A model generated the notes under the pieces. The model searched no databases, was not told where the DNA came from, and saw only the letters and a program-made list of their open reading frames with translations. The position numbers and the translations under genes were made by a program. Positions 35,915 to 58,344 of a stretch of 64,000 nt of DNA are shown in pieces; positions within the stretch are counted from its first letter, which is position 1; every line of letters starts with the position of its first letter. Location of the stretch: positions 186,001 to 250,000 of IMG/VR virus record IMGVR_UViG_3300042540_001399. One strand, given 5' to 3'.

Positions 35915-35986
35915 GCTCTGTAAGCATTGTTGGAGATGCGCCTGACTTGTAATCAGGAGAAATCAGTTCGATTCTGGTACGGAGCT
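35915..35986 (+). tRNA. tRNA-Thr(TGT)
   Basis: GCTCTGT/ACGGAGC; CCTGA-CTTGTAA-TCAGG; TTCGA. Confidence 0.9.
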
Positions 35987-35993
35987 CAAAAAG

Positions 35994-36002
35994 GTTCTTT
36001 GA
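35994..36002 (+). promoter_or_regulatory. boxA-like antitermination motif
   Basis: GTTCTTTGA; also at 39507, 39981 and 53468, all in RNA-gene leaders. Confidence 0.55.
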
Positions 36003-36019
36003 CATATTGGTCTTTATAG

Positions 36020-36090
36020 TGTTCCCTCGTCTAATGGCAGGACACGCGGTTTTGGTCCGTGGAATTGGGGTTCGAGTCCCTGGGGAACAA
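36020..36090 (+). tRNA. tRNA-Gln(TTG)
   Basis: TGTTCCC/GGGAACA; CGCGG-TTTTGGT-CCGTG. Confidence 0.92.
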
Positions 36091-36096
36091 CAATAA

Positions 36097-36180
36097 GGAA
36101 GAGTAATCACAACGGCTTGTGACTCCGTCTTGAAAACGGCAGGTACTGAAAGGTATGGGGATCGACACCTCACTCTTCCT
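36097..36180 (+). tRNA. tRNA-Ser(TGA)
   Basis: GGAAGAG/CTCTTCC; loop CTTGAAA; long variable arm; T loop ATCGACA. Confidence 0.88.
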
Positions 36181-36189
36181 CAACAATAA

Positions 36190-36262
36190 CTAGGTGTAGC
36201 TCAGATGGTAGAGCGGGTGGTTTGGGACCATCAGGCCGCAGGTTCGATCCCTGTCACTTAGA
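36190..36262 (+). tRNA. tRNA-Pro(TGG)
   Basis: CTAGGTG/CACTTAG; GGTGG-TTTGGGA-CCATC. Confidence 0.93.
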
Positions 36263-36266
36263 CAAC

Positions 36267-36342
36267 GTCTTCGTAGCTCAGTTGGTTTTAGAGCACCTCA
36301 CTTTTAATGAGGGGGTCACAGGTTCGAGCCCTGTCGGGGACA
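36267..36342 (+). tRNA. tRNA-Lys(TTT)
   Basis: GTCTTCG/CGGGGAC; CCTCA-CTTTTAA-TGAGG. Confidence 0.95.
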
Positions 36343-36384
36343 CAAAAATTTAGTAAAACTGAGCGATTTATACCAAAAAATGGT

Positions 36385-36392
36385 TATATTTG
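36385..36392 (+). promoter_or_regulatory. internal Bacteroidota -7 promoter element
   Basis: TATATTTG 17 nt before tRNA-Val. Confidence 0.6.
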
Positions 36393-36409
36393 CGTAAATA
36401 AACTAAAAA

Positions 36410-36483
36410 ACACTCTTAGCTCAGATGGTAGTAGCGGTTGTCTTACATACAACAGGTCACAGGTTCGATCCCTGTAGGGTGTA
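36410..36483 (+). tRNA. tRNA-Val(TAC)
   Basis: ACACTCT/AGGGTGT; GTTGT-CTTACAT-ACAAC. Confidence 0.92.
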
Positions 36484-36489
36484 CAATAA

Positions 36490-36575
36490 GGGAGAGTTGA
36501 GCAATTGGTTGGCTCAGCAGACTGTAAATCTGTCGTCGTAAGACCTTGGGGGTTCGAGTCCCTCCTCTCCCACCA
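36490..36575 (+). tRNA. tRNA-Tyr(GTA)
   Basis: GGGAGAG/CTCTCCC-A-CCA; loop CTGTAAA; variable arm. Confidence 0.95.
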
Positions 36576-36581
36576 CAAAAA

Positions 36582-36654
36582 GGACAAGTAGCTCAATTGG
36601 TAGAGCACCGCACTGTTAATGCGGGGGTTACAGGATCGTACCCTGTCTTGTCCG
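36582..36654 (+). tRNA. tRNA-Asn(GTT)
   Basis: GGACAAG/CTTGTCC; loop CTGTTAA; T loop ATCGTAC. Confidence 0.92.
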
Positions 36655-36660
36655 CAATAA

Positions 36661-36733
36661 GTTCACGTAGCTCAATTGGTAGAGCGCCGATCTGATACGT
36701 CGGAGGTAATGGGATCGTAACCCGTCGTGAACA
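36661..36733 (+). tRNA. tRNA-Ile(GAT)
   Basis: GTTCACG/CGTGAAC; loop CTGATAC; T loop ATCGTAA. Confidence 0.92.
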
Positions 36734-36737
36734 CTAC

Positions 36738-36821
36738 GGAAGATAAACCTTGATGGCGATAGGGTCCGCCTGCTAAGCGAGATGTACCTTTGGGTATTTG
36801 GTTCGATTCCAATGTCTTCCG
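36738..36821 (+). tRNA. tRNA-Ser(GCT)
   Basis: GGAAGA/TCTTCC; loop CTGCTAA; variable arm. Confidence 0.88.
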
Positions 36822-36827
36822 CAAAAC

Positions 36828-36897
36828 GCCGATAGGAAAGGTTTCCGATCCGGGCTCATATCCTGGATGTCATTGGGTTCGATACCCTTTATCGGTA
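36828..36897 (+). tRNA. atypical tRNA(CAT), probable elongator Met with shrunken D arm
   Basis: GCCGATA/TATCGGT; CCGGG-CTCATAT-CCTGG; D region only GGAA-AGGT-TTCC. Confidence 0.7.
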
Positions 36898-36903
36898 CTA
36901 CAT

Positions 36904-36977
36904 GGTGTATGTAGCTCAGTTGGCAGAGTGCTTGATTGTGGTTCAAGAGGTCATGGGTTCGACCCCCATCATACACA
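36904..36977 (+). tRNA. tRNA-His(GTG)
   Basis: encoded G-1, GTGTATG/CATACAC; loop TTGTGGT. Confidence 0.93.
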
Positions 36978-36978
36978 C

Positions 36979-37075
36979 AAATAGTTCACAACGGACAAGG
37001 CTTAGGCTCAAAGTGTGAGGTTATAATTCCTTATATTCCCTGAGGTGGGTGGCGAGTGGTTGACCAGAACTATTT
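36979..37075 (+). ncRNA. candidate structured RNA A
   Basis: 9-bp closing stem AAATAGTTC/GAACTATTT; no ORF. Confidence 0.45.
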
Positions 37076-37077
37076 AT

Positions 37078-37149
37078 ACCTTCGTAGCTTAATGGAAAAG
37101 CCTCAGAATACGAATCTGATGATTGGGAGTTCGACCCTCTCCGAAGGTA
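37078..37149 (+). tRNA. tRNA-Arg(ACG)
   Basis: ACCTTCG/CGAAGGT; TCAGA-ATACGAA-TCTGA. Confidence 0.92.
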
Positions 37150-37150
37150 C

Positions 37151-37283
37151 AAAAGATGATAGGAAGCGTAGAACAACGGACACGGAGGGGTGTTCGCAAG
37201 GGTACACACTAAGAATATATTTCTCTCTAAGGGTGTGTGAAGTCATACGATGGGATTCCTGATAAAGTTGTTCATCATCTTTT
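37151..37283 (+). ncRNA. candidate structured RNA B
   Basis: AAAAGATGAT/ATCATCTTTT and GAACAAC/GTTGTTC stems, internal hairpins. Confidence 0.55.
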
Positions 37284-37287
37284 ATTT

Positions 37288-37359
37288 ACCCCTTTCGTAT
37301 AATGGAAGTACAACACTCTTCTAAGGTGTCAGGTTGGAGTTCGAATCTCTGAGGGGGTA
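37288..37359 (+). tRNA. tRNA-Arg(TCT)
   Basis: ACCCCTT/AGGGGGT; ACACT-CTTCTAA-GGTGT. Confidence 0.9.
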
Positions 37360-37370
37360 CAACAAAATAC

Positions 37371-37441
37371 GCGTCTCTGGTGTAATGGTAGCATGATGGA
37401 TTCCAAACCCATCGGTCAGGGTTCGAGCCCTTGGGGACGCG
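37371..37441 (+). tRNA. tRNA-Trp(CCA)
   Basis: GCGTCTC/GGGACGC; ATGGA-TTCCAAA-CCCAT. Confidence 0.88.
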
Positions 37442-37449
37442 CTAATTAA

Positions 37450-37522
37450 GGACAGGTAGCTCAGTTGGTAGAGCGTTGGACTGAAGATCCAAGCGTCGGG
37501 GGTTCAATTCCCTCCCTGTCCA
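37450..37522 (+). tRNA. tRNA-Phe(GAA)
   Basis: GGACAGG/CCTGTCC; TTGGA-CTGAAGA-TCCAA. Confidence 0.95.
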
Positions 37523-37568
37523 CAAAATAAAATTTGTAATTTCTAACAAAAACCATTATCTTTGTATA

Positions 37569-38063
37569 ATGAAACATTTACCATACGAAGCTACAGGAAA
37601 GGCAATTAAGGGATATTCTGAATCAGAAACCGCTAGACGTGAAACAAATGACTGTGTGGTTAGAGCATTTGCATCGTCATTTGAAGTGTCTTATGATTAT
37701 GCCCATAAGTTTGTTGCGGATGAATTTGGTAGAAGACCAAGAAAAGGAACTTACGGAACTGTATCAAAACTTGTCAAAATGGCCGACAGTTTATTTAAAG
37801 TTAATGGTAAAAAAGTTTGTCCTGTTGGTATTAGACACAACGATAATATGTTAAGATCTTTGATGTATGATGTTAAAGTGAAAGGGGAAATTAAAAAAAG
37901 AAATATGACTGTTGGGACATTTGTTAAACAAAATCCAAAAGGAACTTTTTTTGTTTTGGTTAGACGACACGCATTTACAATCAAAGATGGTGTTGTAATT
38001 GGTAATTGGGATGACGCTATAAAAACAAAAAGACCAATGAGATGTGCCTTCAGAATTAAATAA
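37569..38063 (+). CDS. phage protein with NDCVVRA...HAF.I.DG motif (possible Cys-His-Asp peptidase fold)
   Basis: TATCTTTG -7 element at 37557-37564; Cys, His and Asp motif residues. Confidence 0.65.
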   Translation: MKHLPYEATGKAIKGYSESETARRETNDCVVRAFASSFEVSYDYAHKFVADEFGRRPRKGTYGTVSKLVKMADSLFKVNGKKVCPVGIRHNDNMLRSLMYDVKVKGEIKKRNMTVGTFVKQNPKGTFFVLVRRHAFTIKDGVVIGNWDDAIKTKRPMRCAFRIK

Positions 38064-38075
38064 AAAAATAAAAAA

Positions 38076-38531
38076 ATGAACCGTGTATTTAGAACGGTGG
38101 AAGGGGTTTCTATACCTGATATTGTAAAACATACTATTGATATTCTTAAAGAATGTCCATATGCTGAAATACACATTGGTACAGACTCACAAAACCATAG
38201 AAGATCAACCGTGTATGTTACGGCAATAGCATATAGATATGGTAACCGTGGGGTTCACTACATTTATCATAAACAAAAAATTAAAAAAATTCGTGATAAG
38301 TGGACAAGATTATGGAATGAAGCTGATTATTCGATCGAAGTTGCAAATTGGTTGACAAATAAAATAAAGGTTCAAGTTGAAATAGACCTTGATTACAATT
38401 ATCAAGAAAAGTACTTCAGTTCGAAGTTAGTTGGTCCAGCGGTTGGGTGGGTACAATCGTTAGGTTATAAGGCAAATATAAAACCAAATAATCAAATTGC
38501 AACAAGAGCGGCAGACCACCACTGTCGTTAA
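38076..38531 (+). CDS. RNase H-like YkuK family protein
   Basis: IGTDSQ, RLWNEA, DLDYN, IKP...AADH. Confidence 0.8.
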   Translation: MNRVFRTVEGVSIPDIVKHTIDILKECPYAEIHIGTDSQNHRRSTVYVTAIAYRYGNRGVHYIYHKQKIKKIRDKWTRLWNEADYSIEVANWLTNKIKVQVEIDLDYNYQEKYFSSKLVGPAVGWVQSLGYKANIKPNNQIATRAADHHCR

Positions 38532-38533
38532 TT

Positions 38534-38605
38534 GGTCGGGTGTCTGATGGGTAAAGTCTCGGTCTGCAAAACCGTAGTATGTGGGTTCGAATCCCACCCC
38601 GACCT
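38534..38605 (+). tRNA. tRNA-Cys(GCA)
   Basis: GGTCGGG/CCCGACC, U73; loop CTGCAAA. Confidence 0.9.
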
Positions 38606-38614
38606 CAACAAAAT

Positions 38615-38688
38615 GCCCCTATGGCGGAATTGGTATACGCGTGTGACTTAGGATCACAATCTTGCAGGTTCGAGTCCTGCTGGGGGTA
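38615..38688 (+). tRNA. tRNA-Leu(TAG), short variable loop
   Basis: GCCCCTA/TGGGGGT; TGTGA-CTTAGGA-TCACA; variable region ATCTT. Confidence 0.9.
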
Positions 38689-38727
38689 CAAATATTTTTA
38701 TTAGTATATTTATACTAAAAGATTATT

Positions 38728-39318
38728 ATGAAAAAGATTATAAGACTTACTGAATCAGATCTCGCTCGTATAGTTGGACGAGTTATTAAAGAAGAATATG
38801 ATGAAGATGATGAAGTGGAGGTTACACCTGAAATGATTATCAAAATGCTTATGGATAGTGCCGAATCAACCCCACAAGAAAATTATGATGACCTATATGA
38901 TTGGATGCAAGATGTATTTTCACCGGTTGAAAGTGAACTTGAGGATATGGGGTATGATATTGACGACCTTCGTATGACATATGATGATGTTATAATGAGT
39001 TTATGGGATGATAATGATGAAGATGATGAGGAATCATTATATGAATCAGATCTCGCTCGTATCGTTAAACAAGTTATTAGTGAATCTAAAAAGAATCTTA
39101 GTAAATCTGAAATATTGAAGATGTCAAAAGATGAGCTAAAAGATGTTTATGGTGAATTGGAAGTAAAAGGTGAGTATCACGGAAACAAAGGAACATTCCA
39201 CCACTTCAAAAGAACTGCAATCGGAGATATTGTCTGTAGTTTTAGAACTGATGACTCAACACCATCAGGATTGAAAAGAAATACTCAAGGAATTAAAGTC
39301 AAAAATTTAGATTTTTAA
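38728..39318 (+). CDS. protein with two LxESDL motifs
   Basis: MKKIIRLTESDLARIV and internal LYESDLARIV; ATATTTAT 38706-38713. Confidence 0.8.
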   Translation: MKKIIRLTESDLARIVGRVIKEEYDEDDEVEVTPEMIIKMLMDSAESTPQENYDDLYDWMQDVFSPVESELEDMGYDIDDLRMTYDDVIMSLWDDNDEDDEESLYESDLARIVKQVISESKKNLSKSEILKMSKDELKDVYGELEVKGEYHGNKGTFHHFKRTAIGDIVCSFRTDDSTPSGLKRNTQGIKVKNLDF

Positions 39319-39324
39319 TAAAAC

Positions 39325-39356
39325 TTGACACTTTTGAAATTATTAGTATATTTATA
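39325..39356 (+). promoter_or_regulatory. promoter upstream of leader 2
   Basis: TTGACA 39325-39330 and TATATTTATA 39347-39356. Confidence 0.6.
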
Positions 39357-39377
39357 AAACAAATTAAAAAACCGCAA

Positions 39378-39446
39378 ATGAAAAATTTACACATATTATT
39401 GATAGGGGGCGATTTAGCTGAAGCAACTTTCAAGAAGAGGGTGTAA
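39378..39446 (+). CDS. attenuator leader peptide 2 (22 aa)
   Basis: MKNLHILLIGGDLAEATFKKRV; codons match tRNA array 2. Confidence 0.85.
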   Translation: MKNLHILLIGGDLAEATFKKRV

Positions 39447-39469
39447 TATTTTATACATTTAATATTTAG

Positions 39470-39504
39470 AACCCCTCTTCCAAAAAAGAGGGGTTTTTTG
39501 TTTT
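39470..39504 (+). terminator. attenuator terminator 2
   Basis: AACCCCTCTT/AAGAGGGGTT plus T tract; boxA-like motif and tRNA-Leu follow. Confidence 0.9.
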
Positions 39505-39530
39505 AGGTTCTTTGAAATAATGGTAATAAT

Positions 39531-39615
39531 GGTTCGGTGGTGGAATTGGCAATACACGACAGGTTTAAGCCCTGTTTCCCATTGAGGATTGTGGGTTCGA
39601 GTCCCACCCGGACTA
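39531..39615 (+). tRNA. tRNA-Leu(TAA)
   Basis: GGTTCGG/CCGGACT; ACAGG-TTTAAGC-CCTGT; variable arm. Confidence 0.93.
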
Positions 39616-39620
39616 CAACA

Positions 39621-39716
39621 AAAACACATAAACTTTGGTTCCCACACAGCGGTGAGACGGGGTAAGTTATATACAATTTCTCGGGGCTGGAAGTAGAAAG
39701 CCAAAGAATGTGTTTT
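39621..39716 (+). ncRNA. candidate rod-like structured RNA C (6S-like?)
   Basis: AAAACACAT/ATGTGTTTT, CTTTGGTT/AGCCAAAG, CAGC/GCTG, GAGA/TCTC nested stems. Confidence 0.55.
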
Positions 39717-39777
39717 TTTAAAAAAAACTTTACAAAGTATTTGGTAGAACAAAATAAAAAATTTAATTTTGTAATAA

Positions 39778-39894
39778 ATGAAGACAATTGAAGTTACATA
39801 TCAAGAAATCAAAATGGCAACAAGGCCAAATGTGTATAAAAATAAAAAAAAATACACAAGAAAAGAAAAACATAAAAAAGATTTGGTAGATTAA
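39778..39894 (+). CDS. small basic protein, ArfA-like motif (38 aa)
   Basis: MKTIEVTYQEIKMATRPNVYKNKKKYTRKEKHKKDLVD; TAATTTTG at 39764-39771. Confidence 0.6.
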   Translation: MKTIEVTYQEIKMATRPNVYKNKKKYTRKEKHKKDLVD

Positions 39895-39905
39895 AAAAAA
39901 TCTTA

Positions 39906-39989
39906 TATCTTTGTTAAACAAATGACGGGGGTAGGAAAATTAGTGTTGTGGATTCCTACTCCCGTGTAAAAGGGAAGAAAGTTCTTTGA
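39906..39989 (+). promoter_or_regulatory. -7 promoter, 13-bp hairpin and boxA-like motif (rrn-leader-like)
   Basis: TATCTTTG 39906-39913; ACGGGGGTAGGAA/TTCCTACTCCCGT 39925-39965; GTTCTTTGA 39981-39989. Confidence 0.6.
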
Positions 39990-40000
39990 TTTAAAATATT

Positions 40001-40081
40001 GTGGTTGTAAGCAATGGGAAACTCGTTAAGTACATCAACCAGTTGGCTCAAGATGGTGAAACGAGAGTGTGAGTCAACTAC
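40001..40081 (+). ncRNA. candidate structured RNA D
   Basis: GTGGTTG/CAACTAC, CTCGTT/AACGAG, CATC/GATG nested stems. Confidence 0.45.
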
Positions 40082-40103
40082 TAAATCACAAAAAAAATGA
40101 AAT

Positions 40104-40228
40104 AGGCAAGTGGCGGAATTTATGGCAGACGCTTAGGTTGATTCCCCGTAAGAAGTCACCGAGATATAGCTGGGGATGTCTCTTGAAAAGGGAACTATAT
40201 CGTACAGGTTCGAATCCTGTTTTGCCTA
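40104..40228 (+). ncRNA. tRNA-like RNA with expanded anticodon/variable region and pseudoknot
   Basis: AGGCAAG/TTTGCCT acceptor, Leu-type D arm, ACAGG-TTCGAAT-CCTGT T arm, ~70-nt insert. Confidence 0.75.
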
Positions 40229-40233
40229 CACAT

Positions 40234-40306
40234 CGCGGGATGTGGAAGATGGTTATCCGCTCGGTCTCATAAGCCGAGATCGCCGGTTCGAGTCCGGCTC
40301 CCGCAA
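40234..40306 (+). tRNA. initiator tRNA-fMet(CAT)
   Basis: C1:A72 mismatch, CGCGGGA/TCCCGCA; loop CTCATAA. Confidence 0.9.
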
Positions 40307-40311
40307 CTTAA

Positions 40312-40371
40312 AGGGTGGATAGGTGGAAGGGCCTTTCCTGAAAGACGGTTTACTAGGCCCGTGTCCACCCT
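40312..40371 (+). ncRNA. candidate small structured RNA E
   Basis: AGGGTGGATA/TGTCCACCCT and GGGCCT/AGGCCC stems. Confidence 0.45.
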
Positions 40372-40382
40372 ACTGAATTTAT

Positions 40383-40463
40383 GCTGACGTACCAGTGGAT
40401 GCTTATATCATCTATACCTGTAGCGGTAAGTTGAAAACGTTGGTTCGAATCCAACCGTCAGTA
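40383..40463 (+). tRNA. D-armless tRNA-like RNA with TAT anticodon-like loop
   Basis: GCTGACG/CGTCAGT; GGATG-CTTATAT-CATCT; GTTGG-TTCGAAT-CCAAC; 7-nt D replacement. Confidence 0.6.
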
Positions 40464-40466
40464 CGG

Positions 40467-40610
40467 GAGTGTATGCAGTAGAGATCTGCTTATGATGGTA
40501 GGGACAAACACTTTAAAAAAGGGTCCCAAAGAGATAAGCCGTTTAGTAGTTTTGGTCGATAAAAACTAACGGATTTTATAGTAATGGTTCACCGATCGAA
40601 ACCAATACTC
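40467..40610 (+). ncRNA. candidate multibranched RNA F
   Basis: GAGTGT/ATACTC closing stem with four internal hairpins. Confidence 0.5.
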
Positions 40611-40681
40611 ATGATGTCAGAAAGGTTGATCACCTAATTCATGTAAACACCGTGACAACACCCCAAAGTTGTCACACTTTT

Positions 40682-40757
40682 GCGGGAGTAGCTCAATTGG
40701 TAGAGTTCCAGCCTTCCAAGCTGGCTGTTGAGGGTTCGAATCCCTTCTCCCGCTCCA
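40682..40757 (+). tRNA. tRNA-Gly(TCC)
   Basis: GCGGGAG/CTCCCGC-T-CCA; loop CTTCCAA. Confidence 0.95.
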
Positions 40758-40761
40758 AGTT

Positions 40762-40834
40762 GGGCCTGATGCCGACGGCAGGTCGAGTGGTTTGCAACCA
40801 CATCGTTTGGGTTCGATTCCCACAGTGTCCACCA
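40762..40834 (+). tRNA. atypical tRNA-Ala(TGC)
   Basis: G3:U70, A73, encoded CCA; GTGG-TTTGCAA-CCAC; bulged acceptor stem. Confidence 0.75.
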
Positions 40835-41007
40835 AATAAACAAAAAAACAAAGTAGTGATGAAGGAAGTTTTGTCAGGAACTTTAAAATCAAGAAAAGTT
40901 AATTTTGTTCAGATTGAAAATAACAGTGATTTTTTAAGTTCTTTAAGAAAAAAAATAAAAAAAAGAATAAGTAATTTAAAAAAAACAATTAAATTTGTAA
41001 AAAAAAG

Positions 41008-41087
41008 AAGATGAGTTTCCCTACATCCCGGATTAGTGAGAAACTTAAAGAGGGACAAAAGTGGTACACAAGTCCACGACTCATCTT
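41008..41087 (+). ncRNA. candidate structured RNA G
   Basis: AAGATGAGT/ACTCATCTT closing stem, two hairpins; TAAATTTG at 40990-40997. Confidence 0.45.
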
Positions 41088-41092
41088 AATTT

Positions 41093-41164
41093 GGTCGGTT
41101 CATCTAGGGGTCAGGATACAAGGTTTTCATCCTTGTCACACGGGTTCGAATCCCGTACCGACTA
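41093..41164 (+). tRNA. tRNA-Glu(TTC)
   Basis: GGTCGGT/ACCGACT; CAAGG-TTTTCAT-CCTTG. Confidence 0.93.
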
Positions 41165-41189
41165 CAAACCTGTCAAGGTAGTACAGGAA

Positions 41190-41305
41190 GGTCAGGAGTG
41201 TAATGAGGCACGGTGCCAAGTCCTAAAGACACCACGGTCCAAGAGCAATTTGGACGCGAGAAGTTATAAGGTTGCTCATTGTAGGTTCGAATCCTACCCT
41301 GACTT
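41190..41305 (+). ncRNA. tRNA-like RNA: acceptor plus T arm with novel 84-nt body
   Basis: GGTCAGG/CCTGACT; GTAGG-TTCGAAT-CCTAC; AATGAG/CTCATT and GTCCAA/TTGGAC stems. Confidence 0.7.
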
Positions 41306-41307
41306 CA

Positions 41308-41455
41308 CGGTTCGGATCATCACCGAATAGTATGCCCAATACGATGAGAAATGAGGTGATACCTCATATGGGACTTCTGATAGATAAAGGATCTATTCGG
41401 TTTGACTAACCGCGGGAAATATCAAAGAGGGTTGAAGAACTACGTACCCTCGAGT
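41308..41455 (+). ncRNA. candidate multi-hairpin RNA H
   Basis: CCGAATAG/CTATTCGG, ATGAGG/CCTCAT, CGGTT/AACCG, GAGGG/CCCTC. Confidence 0.4.
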
Positions 41456-41461
41456 CCAATT

Positions 41462-41536
41462 GGTCCATTGGTGTAGTGGCTAACATTCATCCCTGTCACG
41501 GATGAGCCGCGAGTTCGATTCTCGCATGGACCGCCA
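41462..41536 (+). tRNA. tRNA-Asp(GTC)
   Basis: GGTCCAT/ATGGACC-G-CCA; CATCC-CTGTCAC-GGATG. Confidence 0.95.
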
Positions 41537-41558
41537 AACTTATTAAAAATTAACCATT

Positions 41559-41828
41559 ATGAAAACTTTTCAAGACTTGGAATTTATAAAAATAAATGAT
41601 GCACCGTTTATGGTTGGTAAAAAATCCCGTATGCATTTTGATAATGGGTTCGGTGTATCTGTTGTATCACACTCTTATTCATATGGGGGTCGTGATGGTC
41701 TTTATGAAGTCGCGGTCCTTGACTCTGACGACAATCTTACCTACGATACTCCAATAACCAATGATGTAATGGGTTACTTAACTGAACAAGATGTTACTAA
41801 TGTCATGAAACAAGTTCAAGAGCTATAA
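41559..41828 (+). CDS. hypothetical phage protein
   Basis: 89 aa; FDNGFGVSVV...GGRDGLYEVAVL. Confidence 0.75.
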   Translation: MKTFQDLEFIKINDAPFMVGKKSRMHFDNGFGVSVVSHSYSYGGRDGLYEVAVLDSDDNLTYDTPITNDVMGYLTEQDVTNVMKQVQEL

Positions 41829-41913
41829 AAGATGACAGTTTTTTTATTCATAACATTTTTAACGACACTTTTTTTGTTGAGAAAAAAAAGAAAGTTTTAA
41901 GTAGATAAAAAAA

Positions 41914-41987
41914 GGTCTCTTAGCTCATTAGGTTAGAGCAACTGACTCATAATCAGTAGGTGGTTGGTTCGATCCCAACAGGGACCA
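41914..41987 (+). tRNA. tRNA(CAT), Ile2 (lysidine)-type
   Basis: GGTCTCT/AGGGACC; GACTCATAATC anticodon arm as in bacterial tRNA-Ile2 (recalled, not searched). Confidence 0.8.
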
Positions 41988-42032
41988 CAAAAGTATTGAA
42001 TATTTTAAAACAGAAATTATTATTTATAATAT

Positions 42033-42106
42033 GCACCCGTAGCTCAGCTGGATAGAGCAACTGCCTTCTAAGCAGTAGGTCAATGGTTCGAATCCATTCG
42101 GGTGTA
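42033..42106 (+). tRNA. tRNA-Arg(TCT), second copy
   Basis: GCACCCG/CGGGTGT; ACTGC-CTTCTAA-GCAGT. Confidence 0.95.
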
Positions 42107-42178
42107 CTTTTTTTTTATTTTTTTTTTGGAAATCAAAAAGTTTCCTGTATCTTTGTTGAAATAAATAACGATAAAGAT

Positions 42179-42928
42179 ATGACAACAGACATCACAGCAC
42201 AGGTAAAAAATTACAACGGTAAAAATTCATTCATTTTGAAAATGAAAGACGCAATTAGTAAATATGGATCACTTACTGTGAACCAAAAATCTGCAGTAGA
42301 AAAAATTTTTAAGAATGTTGATGAAGTAAAGTCAGTTGAAATGACTGAAGATCTTAAGAAAATTGCATCCTATGACGGGCCAAATTCTTTTGTTTTGGAT
42401 ATTAAAAATAAACTTACTCAATATGGTAAACTTTCTGAAAAACAAATTTCGGCTGGTTTGAAGCAAATCGACAAAGAACAAAACAAAACTGTTGTTCGTA
42501 AAGTTAATGTACCAGCAATTGGTGATACTATCAAAGTTGGTAGAAAAATTGGTCAACAACTTAAAGAAAAATACGGTCTTAATTTTAACCCAATTTTGTT
42601 GGACATCACAAAAGTTTTATCGTTTTCTGCTAAAGCTGTAAAATTTTCAGGTAAAATGACCGTAAAACGTGGTGACGTTTGTGTGTGTTGTGCAAAAACT
42701 CTTACCGATGAGTTTTCAATGTTAACTAAAATGGGTAAGACATGTGCGAAACACATGGGTGTTGAGTACATCACAGACGCAAGTGAGGCGGATAAATTCC
42801 GTGAAGAGTACCTACGTCGTGTTGAAGAAATTGGTGAAATGGAATTTTGGGTTCCAAATTCCCAAATTAAATCTTGGGAAGGAGACACTAATGTTCTTCA
42901 AAAAATGTCACACCTTTGGTTCAAATAA
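42179..42928 (+). CDS. protein with two N-terminal repeats and a Zn-finger (DUF6011-like)
   Basis: YNGKNSF...YGSLT..Q repeated; CVCCAKTLTD..S...MGKTCA. Confidence 0.7.
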   Translation: MTTDITAQVKNYNGKNSFILKMKDAISKYGSLTVNQKSAVEKIFKNVDEVKSVEMTEDLKKIASYDGPNSFVLDIKNKLTQYGKLSEKQISAGLKQIDKEQNKTVVRKVNVPAIGDTIKVGRKIGQQLKEKYGLNFNPILLDITKVLSFSAKAVKFSGKMTVKRGDVCVCCAKTLTDEFSMLTKMGKTCAKHMGVEYITDASEADKFREEYLRRVEEIGEMEFWVPNSQIKSWEGDTNVLQKMSHLWFK

Positions 42929-43023
42929 AAAAAAAGTGGGGTTTGTTCATCAATAGAACGGCCCCACTCATTTTGTATTTTTTTGTTAAAATTTTTTATT
43001 ATTTATATTATAAACATCATCAC

Positions 43024-43113
43024 ATGGACAACTCAATCATAGCGGCAATATTAACACCAATAGTTCTATTTGGTATTTTTCTTTATTTCTACTTTACAGA
43101 TAAAGAATACTAA
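43024..43113 (+). CDS. small membrane peptide (29 aa)
   Basis: MDNSIIAAILTPIVLFGIFLYFYFTDKEY after TATTTAT. Confidence 0.5.
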   Translation: MDNSIIAAILTPIVLFGIFLYFYFTDKEY

Positions 43114-43117
43114 AGTT

Positions 43118-43726
43118 TTATTTTATATCGGTAGACTCTAAAAGTGTGTAAGAAAATTTGTTACCATGGATTTTTGCCGCTTTTTTACATATTGACATAA
43201 ATTCATCAAAATCTTTAACTCTTTTAAATACCTGACATCCTTCGGACCAATTTTCAACCCAAGTCGAGTCCTGACCGGCTTTGTGTATGTTAATACCAAA
43301 CATTCCTGTGTCTGTTTTAGTTTCTTCAAAAATTAAATCTTTATTAGAATCTCTCCAAACTGTTACATTACCTAATCTTTGGCAAAGAGCGTCGTATTTC
43401 CCTTGATGTTTATCAATTTTCCAAACACCTCGATACTGGCCGGGTACTAATCTTGCAACGCCATTTTTGTTGTGAAATTCCATGACCCCTTTTTTACCAG
43501 GATCACATGTTGCCATCCAACAATGAAATTTCCAACTGCCTGTTTCGTCTTTATAAGTTATCGTTAGACAATCATCAAAAACATTTGTGACTTTGTCAGC
43601 AACACTTGGTTCATTATTTCTAACACCAACAATATTTACATCATAACCTTTGTTAGATGCGTCGTCAAACCATTTAAAATTTTTTGATTTGACAGTAGTT
43701 TCTATTTGTTCTTTTGTATAACACAT
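43118..43726 (-). CDS. YkuD/L,D-transpeptidase-like cell-wall enzyme
   Basis: GINIH...NWSEGCQVF His/Cys motif. Confidence 0.65.
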   Translation of the reverse strand: MCYTKEQIETTVKSKNFKWFDDASNKGYDVNIVGVRNNEPSVADKVTNVFDDCLTITYKDETGSWKFHCWMATCDPGKKGVMEFHNKNGVARLVPGQYRGVWKIDKHQGKYDALCQRLGNVTVWRDSNKDLIFEETKTDTGMFGINIHKAGQDSTWVENWSEGCQVFKRVKDFDEFMSICKKAAKIHGNKFSYTLLESTDIK

Positions 43727-43791
43727 AATATATTTTTTTTTATAAATATAAAGTTTTTCAAAAAGTAAATAGTTTGATAATATTTATTAAT

Positions 43792-45549
43792 ATGTCAAAA
43801 TTGTCTAAAGTATCTTTTTTTATTTCGATAGTGATTATGTCAATTTATTTTGTGACACAATCTTTACTTGTGACAGGAAACATAAGTTATAGTAAAAATA
43901 TCGGTTATGCTGGATATATATGTTTTTTACTTTTTGTATCTTTTTTTGGGATTTACATTTATGAATATTTGAAAAAAAACAAAAAAATAAAAAAAAGAAG
44001 TGATTACGTTAAAAAATTAAATGAAACATTAATATATCAATCATTAAATTCTTCTTTTTTCGAAGGTAACACGTCAGAAGGCGCTAAAGTTCTAACTAAA
44101 GAAGTCAGTAATTCAATCAATGCTGACAGATGCTCAGTTTGGTTGTACAATACAGACAGAACTTCAATTATTTGTCAACAATTGTATTCCAAAAAAACTG
44201 ACAGCTGGGAACAAAATTATGAATTATTAAAAGAAGATTATAAACCTTATTTTTTATCTCTTTTATTAAATCCTATCATAGTTGCAAATGATGCAAGAAA
44301 TCATAGTGCAACATCATGTTTTAAAGACACTTATCTTGACCCATTGGGTATTAAATCTATGCTTGATGTTCCCATTTCCTACAAGGGAGACACTATTGGG
44401 GTAATATGTATTGAAAATTTTGATTTTAGAATTTGGGACCAAGTTGAAATTGATTTTGCTCAAATGTTATCAGCATTATATTCATTTGCATATTCAATAA
44501 AAGAAAATAATAATGTTAATAAGACAATTGATGATATTGAAGGATTTATAGATCATTCGGTATTAGTAAGTAAAACGGATTCTAAGGGTAAGATAGTTTA
44601 TGTGAATAAAAAGTTTGAAGATGTTTCTGGTTGGAAACTTAGTCAGGTAATAGGAAAAGATCATAACATTGTTAATTCAGGAAAACATACCAAAAATTTT
44701 TGGAAAGACATGTATAAAACAACAGTAGAAAAAAGAAAGATTTGGAACCAAATAGTTACAAATAAAACAAAAAAAGGTGAACTTTATTGGGTTGATTCTT
44801 ATATAATGGCAGAATTTGACGAACAAGATTGTTTAAAAGGGTTTATGTCTATAAGGTATGATGTTACAGATTTGATAAAAAAAACTGAAGAAATAGCGAA
44901 GAAAAATGTTTATTTGGAACATGCCGCAAAAATATTAAGACATGATATGCATTCAGGAATTAATACTTACATACCAAGAGGGATAAGTTCGTTAGAAAGA
45001 AGATTGAGTGATAACCAAATTCAAGAATATAAATTGGAAGCCCCTTTGAAAATGTTGAAAGAAGGTCTCAAACACGCTCAGAAAGTTTATAAAGGTGTTT
45101 ATGAATTTACTAATTTAGTAAAAAAAGATTCAGTGCTCAACAAAACTAAAGTAAACTTAAAAGAAATATTAGAAAGTTACCTATCAACAACATCATATAA
45201 ATCACAAGTTGTAATTGATACTTTAGAAGACCATGAAGTTAATGAACCTTTATTTTGTACCGCCATCGATAATTTAATTAGAAATGGCCTCAAATATAAT
45301 GACAATGATAACAAATTTGTACATTTATATATGGAAGATTTTCAGTTGGTAATTCAGGATAATGGAAGGGGGCTGTCACAAGAAGAATTTGACAATTTAT
45401 CGAAACCATACGTAAGAAAAGAAAACCAAAAAGAAAGTGGTAGTGGTTTAGGTTTAAATATATGTTTAGCAATACTCAAAGAACACGGATTCAGCGTTTC
45501 TTGTGAAAAAAACCATATAGGCACTAAAATTAAAATTAAATTCAAATGA
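43792..45549 (+). CDS. sensor histidine kinase (2 TM, GAF, PAS/PAC, HisKA, HATPase)
   Basis: H box RHDMH, N box NLIRNGLKYN, G1 QDNGRG, G2 GSGLGL; PAC KTKKGELYWV. Confidence 0.92.
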   Translation: MSKLSKVSFFISIVIMSIYFVTQSLLVTGNISYSKNIGYAGYICFLLFVSFFGIYIYEYLKKNKKIKKRSDYVKKLNETLIYQSLNSSFFEGNTSEGAKVLTKEVSNSINADRCSVWLYNTDRTSIICQQLYSKKTDSWEQNYELLKEDYKPYFLSLLLNPIIVANDARNHSATSCFKDTYLDPLGIKSMLDVPISYKGDTIGVICIENFDFRIWDQVEIDFAQMLSALYSFAYSIKENNNVNKTIDDIEGFIDHSVLVSKTDSKGKIVYVNKKFEDVSGWKLSQVIGKDHNIVNSGKHTKNFWKDMYKTTVEKRKIWNQIVTNKTKKGELYWVDSYIMAEFDEQDCLKGFMSIRYDVTDLIKKTEEIAKKNVYLEHAAKILRHDMHSGINTYIPRGISSLERRLSDNQIQEYKLEAPLKMLKEGLKHAQKVYKGVYEFTNLVKKDSVLNKTKVNLKEILESYLSTTSYKSQVVIDTLEDHEVNEPLFCTAIDNLIRNGLKYNDNDNKFVHLYMEDFQLVIQDNGRGLSQEEFDNLSKPYVRKENQKESGSGLGLNICLAILKEHGFSVSCEKNHIGTKIKIKFK

Positions 45550-58316: not shown

Positions 58317-58344
58317 AAAAGGAGGACTTTTAATCCTCCTTTTT
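58316..58344. terminator. bidirectional terminator
   Basis: AAAAAGGAGGA/TCCTCCTTTTT. Confidence 0.85.

What the first reader, a model, noticed from the sequence alone, without database searches (positions are those of the whole stretch)
40383..40463. D-armless tRNA-like gene with a UAU anticodon loop
Seen: perfect acceptor and T arm, a canonical 7-nt loop CT-TAT-AT on a 5-bp stem, only 7 nt where the D arm should be, and a 25-nt variable region with a TACC/GGTA stem. Established: bacteria normally read AUA with lysidine-modified tRNA-Ile2(CAU); D-armless tRNAs are mainly mitochondrial. Inference: a TilS-independent backup AUA decoder. It lies in the array whose leader uses only AUA Ile codons.
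Basis: partly seen in the sequence, partly recalled or inferred. Interest (0 to 1): 0.7.

Follow-up and report, generated by a model that had tools for sequence, protein, structure and literature searches.

The report
Phage isoleucine tRNA with rearranged D arm
This 81-base gene in a lake-water jumbo phage is very probably a working isoleucine tRNA for the codon AUA. It belongs to a phage-only class of Ile and Arg tRNAs that lack the normal D arm, a shape I did not find described for bacteria or their viruses.

Summary
Window 40383-40463 (+) has a 7-bp acceptor stem, a 5-bp anticodon stem with loop CUUAUAU, a canonical T arm and no D hairpin. ARAGORN misses it and Rfam's tRNA model scores it below threshold (24.9 versus 29 bits).

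It is not a chance look-alike. I collected 61 distinct relatives from viral contigs, nearly all inside same-strand tRNA arrays, and every stem shows compensatory changes. Instead, nt 11-13 pair with nt 36-38 and nt 10 pairs with nt 48, which lengthens the anticodon helix. A D-loop-like segment (UAGCGGUAA) lies 3' of the anticodon arm.

Three features point to a canonical tRNA core and to aminoacylation:
- A Levitt-type 15-48 pair covaries without exception (G-C 34, A-U 15 of 49).
- Anticodons are only Ile (UAU, GAU, one CAU) or Arg.
- All 16 Arg members carry the ArgRS determinant A20, and all 44 Ile members carry A73.

The phage is 31% GC, uses AUA for 39.5% of its Ile codons, and encodes no IleRS or TilS. 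Two strain variants give RNA-library contigs with the same tRNA-sized ends.

Most likely it is a host-charged, TilS-independent AUA decoder. I found no prior description. Charging and decoding are untested.

The parts
40383..40389 (+). Acceptor stem, 5' strand (nt 1-7, GCUGACG)
   Evidence: Pairs with 40456-40462. All 7 pairs show compensatory changes across 31 homologues.
40390..40391 (+). U8 A9, invariant linker
   Evidence: Invariant in A1 and A2. It matches U8 and N9 of canonical tRNAs; that correspondence is an inference.
40392..40392 (+). nt 10 (C), pairs with nt 48 (G, 40430)
   Evidence: Pair types C-G 25, G-C 2, A-U 1, U-A 1, U.G 1, unpaired 1.
40393..40395 (+). Connector helix, 5' strand (nt 11-13, CAG)
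   Evidence: Pairs with 40418-40420. Two of 3 pairs covary. Over the whole class 169 of 183 cells are paired, against 105 +/- 5 for shuffles. RNAalifold recovers the helix independently.
40397..40401 (+). Anticodon stem, 5' strand (nt 15-19, GGAUG)
   Evidence: All 5 pairs covary and 100% of cells are paired.
40402..40408 (+). Anticodon loop CUUAUAU; anticodon UAU at 40404-40406, U33 at 40403, A37 at 40407
   Evidence: Read directly from the sequence. In a search that left the anticodon free, the loop was CUUAUAY/A or CUGAUAA/C.
40409..40413 (+). Anticodon stem, 3' strand (nt 27-31, CAUCU)
40414..40417 (+). Asymmetric internal loop AUAC (nt 32-35), opposite U14 (40396)
   Evidence: A32 is invariant and U33 is at least 90% conserved in A1. 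Its role is inferred: a spacer or hinge between the two stacked helices.
40418..40420 (+). Connector helix, 3' strand (nt 36-38, CUG)
40421..40429 (+). D-loop-like segment UAGCGGUAA (nt 39-47), read as A14, G15, G18, G19, U20, A21 equivalents
   Evidence: UA, G and GG are invariant. G at 40423 covaries with C at 40438 (G-C 34, A-U 15 of 49). The base after GG is A in 16 of 16 Arg members and U in most Ile members.
40430..40430 (+). nt 48 (G), partner of nt 10
40431..40438 (+). Conserved linker UUGAAAAC; its last base (C, 40438) is the Levitt-pair (position 48) equivalent
   Evidence: U49, U50, A52-A55 and C56 are invariant in A1. Levitt-type covariation is shown.
40439..40455 (+). T arm: stem GUUGG/CCAAC with loop UUCGAAU
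   Evidence: aligned to the T arm of RF00005.
40456..40463 (+). Acceptor stem, 3' strand (CGUCAGU) plus discriminator A (40463); CCA is not encoded
   Evidence: The discriminator is A in 44 of 44 Ile-anticodon members. Conservation ends at 40463-40465. RNA-library contigs end at 40463 or 40464.
35915..42107 (+). Surrounding tRNA array: 22 canonical tRNAs, all on the + strand
   Evidence: ARAGORN and Rfam. These are the only tRNAs in the 290,887-bp genome.

Best explanation
Window 40383-40463 encodes a functional elongator tRNA-Ile(UAU). It is transcribed as part of the phage's polycistronic tRNA array, cut to about 81 nt, given CCA by the host enzyme, charged by the host IleRS, and used to read AUA, which makes up about 40% of the phage's Ile codons. 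It needs no lysidine (TilS) modification.

It belongs to a phage-restricted structural class of Ile and Arg tRNAs in which the D hairpin is missing. Nt 10-13 pair with bases on the 3' side of the anticodon arm, giving one long coaxial anticodon helix: 5 bp, an internal loop, 3 bp, then 1 bp. This is about as long as a canonical anticodon stem plus D stem. The D-loop sequence emerges as a 9-nt bulge near the top of that helix. From there its G18G19, A14 and R15 equivalents can make the usual contacts with the T loop, U8 and Y48, so the L-shape and elbow would be kept.

Shown here: the gene, its family, the secondary structure, the 15-48 covariation, the amino-acid-specific identity bases, the array context, codon demand, and presence in RNA libraries with tRNA-sized ends.

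Inferred: the 3D fold, processing, charging with Ile, and decoding of AUA.
For: 1. Family. 61 distinct sequences with this architecture were collected, in 80 occurrences over the loci fetched. The covariance model scores the window copy 103.7 bits, against 20-27 bits for canonical tRNAs.
2. Structure. Acceptor, anticodon stem, T stem, connector helix 11-13/36-38 and pair 10-48 all covary. RNAalifold finds the connector helix on its own.
3. Canonical core. The R15/Y48 equivalent is G-C 34 and A-U 15 of 49, with no exception; over all 61 sequences it is 59 of 61. U8, A14, G18G19 and the T loop are invariant.
4. Identity elements follow the anticodon. Anticodons are only UAU, GAU and CAU, or UCU, UCG, ACG and CCU. 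The base after GG is A in 16 of 16 Arg members and 1 of 45 Ile/CAU members, where U predominates. A73 is present in 44 of 44 Ile members. A20 is the main bacterial ArgRS determinant; A73 and U20 belong to the bacterial Ile identity set (PMC9976931).
5. Context. 67 of 80 occurrences have at least 3 ARAGORN tRNAs within 3 kb, all on the same strand, often 5-15 nt away. The unit moves as a tRNA-sized module with sharp ends.
6. Demand. The genome is 31% GC, and AUA is 39.5% of Ile codons. Most of the phage's other tRNAs also carry U34 anticodons for NNA codons. The genome has no IleRS, TilS or CCA-adding enzyme.
7. RNA. Two 78-nt metatranscriptome contigs from two sequence variants both span 40386-40463, and another ends at 40464. 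The flanking coding stretches (37500-38484, 42819-43400) have zero depth in those libraries.
Against: - There is no direct evidence of aminoacylation, CCA addition or ribosomal use.
- The RNA-library data are assembled contigs at low depth. They cannot rule out DNA carry-over or unprocessed precursors, and spacer 40491-40648 is also covered.
- E. coli IleRS charges a UAU-anticodon tRNA-Ile poorly, and on E. coli ribosomes such a tRNA does not distinguish AUA from AUG (PMC3575796). Function in an ordinary host is therefore not guaranteed, and the host is unknown.
- Several E. coli Ile determinants are absent: C4-G69, C29-G41 and A38 are G4-C69, A29-U41 and U38 here (compared).
- The 3D fold is inferred from covariation only.
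- No cultured phage carries a member.
Confidence: 0.7

Rival explanations
1. It is a tRNA mimic that is not used for decoding. It could be a decoy or sponge for a host tRNA-targeting defence nuclease or toxin aimed at tRNA-Ile or tRNA-Arg, or a substrate that titrates a host modification or processing enzyme. The altered D region would make it resistant or non-productive.
For: Phage tRNAs are known to evolve resistance to anticodon nucleases, and several anti-phage tRNases exist (PMC13056530). The class is restricted to two amino acids rather than spread over all of them. The scaffold departs from what aaRS, EF-Tu and the ribosome normally see. This phage also carries a canonical tRNA-Ile(GAU) and canonical Arg tRNAs.
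Against: A decoy for an anticodon nuclease has no obvious need to keep A73 in all Ile members, or A20 only in Arg members. It also has no obvious need for a U33/R37 7-nt loop, a perfect acceptor stem and a canonical elbow. In several arrays the class supplies the only Ile tRNA seen, for example L137, L049 and L123. The UAU anticodon matches the phage's own heavy AUA use.
Confidence: 0.12
2. It is a decoding tRNA, but the decoding is not simply AUA to Ile. It could be charged by another synthetase, or carry a modified or unmodified U34 that also reads AUG, or be used only in a special context such as reprogramming late in infection.
For: Ordinary IleRS recognises U34 poorly, and unmodified UAU reads AUG on E. 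coli ribosomes (PMC3575796). Other phage UAU tRNAs have long variable arms (family 2), a feature linked in nematodes with Leu-charging of tRNA(UAU) (PMC4300185 abstract).
Against: The same scaffold with GAU, an anticodon any bacterial IleRS reads, keeps the same A73 and mostly U20 as the UAU members. This argues for one Ile identity. The scaffold has no long variable hairpin of the Leu or Ser type.
Confidence: 0.1
3. It is a decaying tRNA pseudogene, or merely an RNase P/Z processing punctuation element left in the array.
For: Standard tRNA finders reject it. The single-sequence fold z-score is weak.
Against: The 81-nt unit is about 95% conserved between phages whose flanks are unrelated. Compensatory changes occur in every helix and in a tertiary pair across 61 distinct sequences. 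The anticodon loop is invariant in form. A punctuation element would not need an anticodon restricted to Ile and Arg, or the identity bases.
Confidence: 0.03

Closest known systems
Canonical bacterial and phage tRNA (Rfam RF00005), in particular phage-array tRNAs for A-ending codons
   Same: It has a 7-bp acceptor, a 5-bp anticodon stem with a 7-nt U33/R37 loop, a 5-bp T stem with a UUCGAAU loop, a discriminator base, U8, and A14, R15-Y48 and G18G19 equivalents. It sits in a polycistronic tRNA array.
   Different: There is no D hairpin. Nt 10-13 pair with bases 3' of the anticodon arm, and the D-loop sequence lies after the anticodon arm. About 18 nt separate the connector helix from the T stem. 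The RF00005 score is below the gathering threshold.
Metazoan mitochondrial D-arm-lacking tRNAs (tRNA-Ser(AGY) type; 'type III' in PMC7609411)
   Same: There is no D stem-loop between the acceptor and anticodon stems, and the architecture is still meant to fit the ribosome. From my own knowledge of the mitochondrial literature (not tested here), the anticodon helix in those tRNAs is also thought to be lengthened by pairing of the two connectors.
   Different: The phage class keeps a full D-loop motif with GG, a canonical T loop and a covarying 15-48 pair. It is 77-83 nt long rather than about 60. It occurs in phages of bacteria, which use unadapted bacterial translation factors. There is no sign of common descent.
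TilS-independent tRNA-Ile2(UAU) of Mycoplasma mobile (PMC3575796)
   Same: The UAU anticodon reads AUA without lysidine.
   Different: As far as I know (not checked here), the M. mobile tRNA is a normal cloverleaf. It works with a co-adapted IleRS (Arg865) and ribosome. Here the scaffold is rearranged, and the synthetase and ribosome belong to an unknown host.
Other natural non-canonical tRNAs: allo-tRNA (8/4, 9/3), tRNA-Sec, tRNA-Pyl (PMC5389517, PMC7609411)
   Same: They are natural tRNAs that depart from the standard cloverleaf and are missed or mis-scored by standard finders. UAU is also a frequent allo-tRNA anticodon.
   Different: Those classes change the acceptor/T-stem lengths or shorten the D loop but keep a D arm. 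This element has a standard 7/5 acceptor branch and no D hairpin.
Phage T4 stable RNAs 'species 1 and 2' in the T4 tRNA cluster (from my own knowledge, not checked here)
   Same: They are small stable RNAs with tRNA-like ends, encoded among phage tRNA genes.
   Different: As far as I know they have no assigned anticodon or amino-acid identity. The present class has a canonical anticodon loop and identity bases.

Membership tests
Canonical tRNA (Rfam RF00005 / ARAGORN bacterial model) | Score at or above the family's gathering threshold, or a call by a standard tRNA finder | tested here: not met
   RF00005 scores 24.9 bits against a 29-bit threshold on a 96-nt search. There was no hit in the 8.5-kb search at E <= 10. 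ARAGORN does not call it in standard, intron or relaxed mode.
Canonical tRNA (Rfam RF00005 / ARAGORN bacterial model) | D arm: stem 10-13/22-25 closing an 7-11-nt loop, 5' of the anticodon arm | tested here: not met
   Only 7 nt lie between the acceptor and anticodon stems. The RF00005 alignment deletes 15 model positions there.
Canonical tRNA (Rfam RF00005 / ARAGORN bacterial model) | Acceptor stem 7 bp, anticodon arm 5 bp + 7 nt (U33, R37), T arm 5 bp + T-loop consensus | tested here: met
   All three helices covary.
Canonical tRNA (Rfam RF00005 / ARAGORN bacterial model) | Tertiary core: U8, A14, R15-Y48 Levitt pair, G18G19 opposite the T loop | tested here: met
   Sequence equivalents are present and invariant. 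The 15-48 equivalent covaries G-C/A-U in 49 of 49 sequences. The physical contacts themselves were not tested.
tRNA-Ile (bacterial identity set per PMC9976931) | A35, U36, A37 and discriminator A73 | tested here: met
   The anticodon is UAU, A37 is present and A73 is present. A73 is found in 44 of 44 Ile-anticodon members.
tRNA-Ile (bacterial identity set per PMC9976931) | G34 or lysidine-34; C4-G69, C29-G41, A38, U12-A23 | tested here: not met
   The window copy has U34, G4-C69, A29-U41 and U38. U12-A23 cannot be defined without a D stem. These determinants were established for E. coli; the host here is unknown.
tRNA-Ile (bacterial identity set per PMC9976931) | Aminoacylation by IleRS | not testable with these tools
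   The IleRS + RNA complex job was not folded. No biochemical data exist.
Mitochondrial-type D-armless tRNA | D arm replaced by a short loop, with a degenerate D-loop/T-loop interaction and a short variable region | tested here: not met
   A short connector is present. However, a complete D-loop motif and a canonical T loop are retained, and 25 nt follow the anticodon stem. ARAGORN in mitochondrial mode proposes a different, unsupported fold at 40374-40435.
TilS-independent AUA decoder (M. mobile type) | UAU anticodon on a tRNA with Ile identity, with no tilS in the system | tested here: inconclusive
   The UAU anticodon is present, and the phage genome has no tilS or ileS. The host's tilS, IleRS and ribosome properties are unknown.
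allo-tRNA / tRNA-Sec type | 8/4 or 9/3 (or 8/5, 9/4) acceptor/T-stem configuration | tested here: not met
   The covariation-supported configuration is 7/5.

The most novel reading that the evidence does not exclude
Bacteriophages carry a previously undescribed structural class of working tRNAs for Ile (UAU, GAU, perhaps CAU) and Arg (UCU, UCG, ACG, CCU). In this class the anticodon arm is nested inside what would be the D stem, and the D loop is displaced to its 3' side. Bacterial RNase P, CCA enzyme, IleRS/ArgRS, EF-Tu and ribosomes accept it. The scaffold may have spread because it escapes host tRNA-directed nucleases or host modification requirements. It would be a natural counter-example to the statement that all bacterial-system tRNAs are cloverleaves.
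Probability: 0.5. Interest if true: 0.9.

Novelty: new variant of a known kind. Interest (0 to 1): 0.8.

Why it matters
- tRNA shape is among the most conserved features in biology. [quoted passage not shown] A conserved, covarying, identity-bearing class without a D hairpin would show that the bacterial translation apparatus tolerates, and evolution uses, a different topology.
- Standard annotation misses these genes, so phage tRNA repertoires are under-counted. This phage appears to lack Ala, Ser and an AUA reader until its non-canonical genes are counted.
- The class makes several questions testable: how IleRS and ArgRS read determinants (A20, U20, A73) presented from a displaced D loop; how phages solve AUA decoding without TilS; and whether altered scaffolds protect phage tRNAs from host tRNases.
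- Naturally divergent scaffolds are candidate starting points for orthogonal tRNAs in laboratory strains.

Tried and rejected
Rejected.
- MFE 7-bp anticodon stem (G13-U33, U14-A32): specific to the window sequence. Other members cannot form it, and the family supports 11-13/36-38 instead.
- Pairing of UACC (nt 8-11) with GGUA (nt 43-46): position 10 varies (C, A, U, G) while GG is invariant, so there is no covariation (read by eye). Rejected.
- ARAGORN mitochondrial mode calls an 'mtRNA-Ile(tat)' at 40374-40435 with different arms. This conflicts with the conserved unit boundaries. Rejected.
- Intron-containing or permuted tRNA: ARAGORN with the intron option finds nothing, and the unit is contiguous and 81 nt long.
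- Complex prediction of B. subtilis IleRS (residues 1-919) with the RNA: the job was not folded. It gives no evidence either way.
- Megablast of 39500-42500 against GenBank phages matches only ordinary tRNAs. Blastn of the element finds only LR756502.1, an unannotated 642-kb uncultured phage.
- The strict family pattern gives 0 hits in 185,579 species-representative genomes. A looser pattern finds members only on tRNA-array contigs of MAGs, probably binned phage DNA, and otherwise ordinary Gly and Arg tRNAs.
- Nine literature searches found no description of the class. The library lacks most subscription journals, so prior description cannot be excluded.
- Classifying the CAU tRNA at 41914-41988 as Met or Ile2 was inconclusive.
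- Host inference: PHROGs and Pfam scans of neighbouring genes were uninformative. There is only a weak hint from tRNA similarity to Flavobacterium phages.

Full report
**Source and setting.** The window is bases 186001-250000 of a 290,887-bp IMG/VR virus record that CheckV estimates as 99% complete. The record is 31% GC and recurs in lake-water metagenomes. All 22 tRNAs that ARAGORN finds in the genome lie in one + strand array at window 35915-42107. The finding sits inside that array, between an initiator-type tRNA(CAU) at 40234-40307 and tRNA-Gly at 40682-40757.

**The observation.** The sequence at 40383-40463 reads as follows:
- acceptor GCUGACG
- 7 nt (UACCAGU)
- anticodon stem GGAUG, loop CUUAUAU, stem CAUCU
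- 25 nt
- T arm GUUGG-UUCGAAU-CCAAC
- acceptor CGUCAGU, then discriminator A

The MFE fold gives acceptor, anticodon and T helices, but it is no better than shuffles by a convincing margin (z = -1.79). ARAGORN does not call it in bacterial, intron or relaxed mode. Its mitochondrial mode proposes a different fold at 40374-40435. Rfam's tRNA model found nothing in an 8.5-kb search at E <= 10. On a 96-nt search it gives 24.9 bits against a 29-bit gathering score, spanning exactly 40383-40463, with the D arm deleted and a 22-nt insertion before the T arm.

**It is a conserved family, not a chance look-alike.**
- An exact 22-mer from the element finds five viral contigs. In three of them (L002, L004, L006) the flanks are unrelated and hold different neighbouring tRNAs, yet the 81-nt unit is about 95% identical with sharp boundaries.
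- A pattern fixing only CTTATAT and the T loop at long spacing finds many more copies, with quite different acceptor and anticodon stems.
- A pattern that leaves the anticodon free (GTAGYGG..TTGAAAACGTKGGTTCGAATCC) finds 37 viral loci. Their anticodon loops are only CUUAUAY/A (UAU) or CUGAUAA/C (GAU), and both anticodons are isoleucine.
- On a MAFFT alignment of 31 distinct sequences (A1), 98.5% of cells are paired and 16 of 21 pairs have double changes. Covariation is 0.71, against 0.17 for shuffles and at most 0.10 when partners are slid.
- A covariance model built from A1 scores the window copy 103.7 bits (E about 1e-24). It finds a single copy in the genome, and canonical tRNAs score 20-27 bits.

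The proposed TACC/GGTA stem shows no compensatory change and is unpaired in 6-7 sequences per pair. Two other pairings are supported instead:
- Nt 11-13 pair with nt 36-38. Observed combinations include CAG/CUG, CGA/UCG, CGU/ACG, CAU/AUG, CCC/GGG and ACC/GGU, 19 in all. Over 61 sequences 169 of 183 cells are paired, against 105 +/- 5 for shuffles.
- Nt 10 pairs with nt 48 (C-G, G-C, A-U, U-A, U.G).

RNAalifold predicts the 11-13/36-38 helix without being told. The anticodon arm is thus nested inside a 4-bp helix made by nt 10-13. The 3' strand of that helix is interrupted by a 9-nt bulge, UAGCGGUAA.

**That bulge behaves as a D loop.** It carries an invariant U-A, a purine, an invariant GG and an A, which matches the spacing of A14, R15, G18, G19, N20 and A21. 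The purine after UA covaries perfectly with the base just 5' of the T stem. The counts are G-C 34 and A-U 15 of 49 on alignment A2, and 59 of 61 over all members including the 77-nt subtype. Close relatives switch both bases together: L049 has G..C and L137 has A..U. This is the signature of the 15-48 Levitt pair. Together with invariant U8 and the canonical T loop, it argues that the elbow and core of a normal tRNA are preserved. The anticodon stem, internal loop, 3-bp helix and 1-bp pair would replace the usual anticodon-stem/26/D-stem stack. The 3D statement is an inference.

**The class and its identities.**
- Model and descriptor searches over about 1.5 Mb of fetched loci give 61 distinct sequences in 80 occurrences.
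- The anticodons are UAU (32), GAU (12) and CAU (1), plus the Arg anticodons UCU, UCG, ACG and CCU (16). No other amino acid appears.
- The base after GG (position 20) is A in 16 of 16 Arg members and 1 of 45 Ile/CAU members, where U predominates.
- The discriminator is A in 44 of 44 Ile members and variable in Arg members.
- A20 is the principal bacterial ArgRS determinant. A73 and U20 belong to the bacterial Ile identity set (PMC9976931).

Selection for synthetase determinants that follow the anticodon is hard to explain unless these RNAs are aminoacylated.

**Context.**
- 67 of 80 occurrences have at least three ARAGORN tRNAs within 3 kb, always on the same strand and often 5-15 nt away.
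- In several arrays the class supplies the only Ile tRNA seen in the locus, for example L137, L049 and L123.
- The strict pattern has no hit in 185,579 species-representative bacterial and archaeal genomes. A looser pattern finds members only on tRNA-array contigs of MAGs and none in isolates.
- Among GenBank phages only one unannotated 642-kb uncultured phage has a copy.

**Why this phage would need it.** AUA makes up 39.5% of Ile codons, or 29.8 per 1000 codons. Most of the phage's canonical tRNAs carry U34 anticodons for A-ending codons, and UAU fits that pattern. The genome encodes no class Ia synthetase core domain (PF00133), no TilS N-terminal domain (PF01171) and no CCA-adding enzyme (PF01743). 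Processing and charging must therefore be done by the host.

Of the two CAU tRNAs, the one at 40234-40307 has the C1xA72 mismatch of initiators. The one at 41914-41988 could be elongator Met or Ile2. If it is Met, the UAU tRNA is the only phage-encoded AUA reader.

The canonical set lacks Ala and Ser. A non-canonical tRNA-Ala(UGC) with G3.U70 at 40762-40834 covaries in relatives. An 8/4-like tRNA-Ser(GCU) lies at 36738-36820. With the UAU tRNA these complete the set, which again suggests that the odd genes are used.

**RNA evidence.** In a riverine metatranscriptome (X17), two 78-nt contigs from two sequence variants both span exactly 40386-40463. In a freshwater metatranscriptome (X20), a contig with a different upstream flank ends at 40464. 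Both libraries show zero depth over the coding stretches 37500-38484 and 42819-43400 (X17 from 42425). Contigs from relatives carry the compensatory U18C/A28G variant, and they join 40464 directly to the next tRNA. This fits a transcribed array and a tRNA-sized product. However, the data are low-depth assembled contigs, and the spacer 40491-40648 is also covered, so processing is not proven.

**Cautions.**
- E. coli IleRS charges a UAU tRNA-Ile poorly, and such a tRNA reads AUG as well as AUA on E. coli ribosomes. M. mobile needed an adapted IleRS and ribosome (PMC3575796).
- The host here is unknown. The only hint is tRNA similarity to Flavobacterium phages.
- Several E. coli Ile determinants are absent from the window copy.
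- The attempt to model an IleRS complex was not folded.
- Charging and AUA-specific decoding remain inferences.

**Comparison with known systems.** The element works like a tRNA-Ile for AUA. It fails membership of the canonical tRNA model on the D arm and on the Rfam score. It is not of the mitochondrial D-armless type, because it keeps the D-loop motif, a canonical T loop and a long 3' connector. It is not an allo-tRNA or Sec type, because its acceptor branch is 7/5. Nine full-text searches, a review of non-canonical tRNAs and an identity review gave no description of such a class. One 2024 paper states that all known bacterial tRNAs are cloverleaves. Subscription literature was not searchable.

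**Verdict.** The element is best read as a new structural variant of tRNA, probably functional, with high interest.

Noticed in passing
window 40762-40834 (+): Non-canonical tRNA-Ala(UGC) candidate, missed by ARAGORN. It has G1-C, G2-C and G3.U70 in an acceptor with a bulged U, a tiny GCC-GAC-GGC hairpin, an anticodon stem extended by CGA/UCG, loop UUUGCAA, a 4-bp T stem and A73. The anticodon stem, its extension and the acceptor covary in L052, L053, L119, L087 and L130. It supplies the Ala tRNA missing from the canonical set.
   Followed up: partly
window 36738-36820 (+): tRNA-Ser(GCU)-like gene with a long variable arm. It appears to have an 8-bp acceptor and 4-bp T stem (allo-tRNA/Sec-like 8/4) and discriminator G. 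Rfam tRNA-Sec scores it 31 bits, below threshold. It is conserved in L136 and L006.
   Followed up: partly
window 40312-40372 (+): Conserved ~60-nt RNA directly upstream of the UAU tRNA. It has a 7-bp acceptor-like stem (GGGUGGA/UCCACCC) and an inner hairpin (GGGCC/GGCCC), and both covary in L136, L012 and L002. The loop motif UUCCUGAAAGAYGG is invariant, and there is no T loop. Its function is unknown.
   Followed up: partly
window 40104-40229 and 41188-41307 (+): Two ~120-nt tRNA-like genes with good acceptor and T arms but about 45-50 extra internal nt. RF00005 scores them 27.2 and 21.5 bits. They are conserved in relatives, and one relative replaces the internal part of the second. They could be tRNAs with insertions or another RNA type.
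   Followed up: no
other viral contigs, e.g. L008:3771-3821, L080, L099, L120, L169:4036-4128: A second unusual family of phage tRNA(UAU). It has a normal D arm and a 7/5 acceptor branch, plus a long variable-arm hairpin whose loop reads CAGAUUA or CUGAUAA. The latter is identical to a tRNA-Ile(GAU) anticodon loop. About 45 loci carry it. It could be an IleRS-recruiting mimic, or a Leu/Ser-type identity as in nematode nev-tRNA(UAU).
   Followed up: no
L134:7765-7850(-), L095:6526-6610(+): tRNA-Ile(GAU) of 85-86 nt with a 3-bp D stem and a long variable hairpin (GUGCGAAAGCAC). This is another atypical Ile tRNA, found in arrays that also hold the rearranged UAU tRNA.
   Followed up: no
L126:5432-5507(+): A member of the 77-nt subtype of the rearranged class with anticodon CAU (loop CUCAUAA). 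It could be a lysidine-dependent Ile2 or a Met tRNA on the same scaffold.
   Followed up: no
window 38076-38531 (+): An ORF inside the tRNA array with a strong RNaseH_like (PF04308) match (E = 6e-26). Two ORFs without family matches also lie in the array, at 37569-38063 and 38728-39318.
   Followed up: no
window 43774-45549 (+) and 58330-60390 (-): A phage-encoded GAF-PAS-HATPase sensor histidine kinase, and a 686-aa ATP-dependent protease (PHROGs phrog_4871, E = 2e-236).
   Followed up: no
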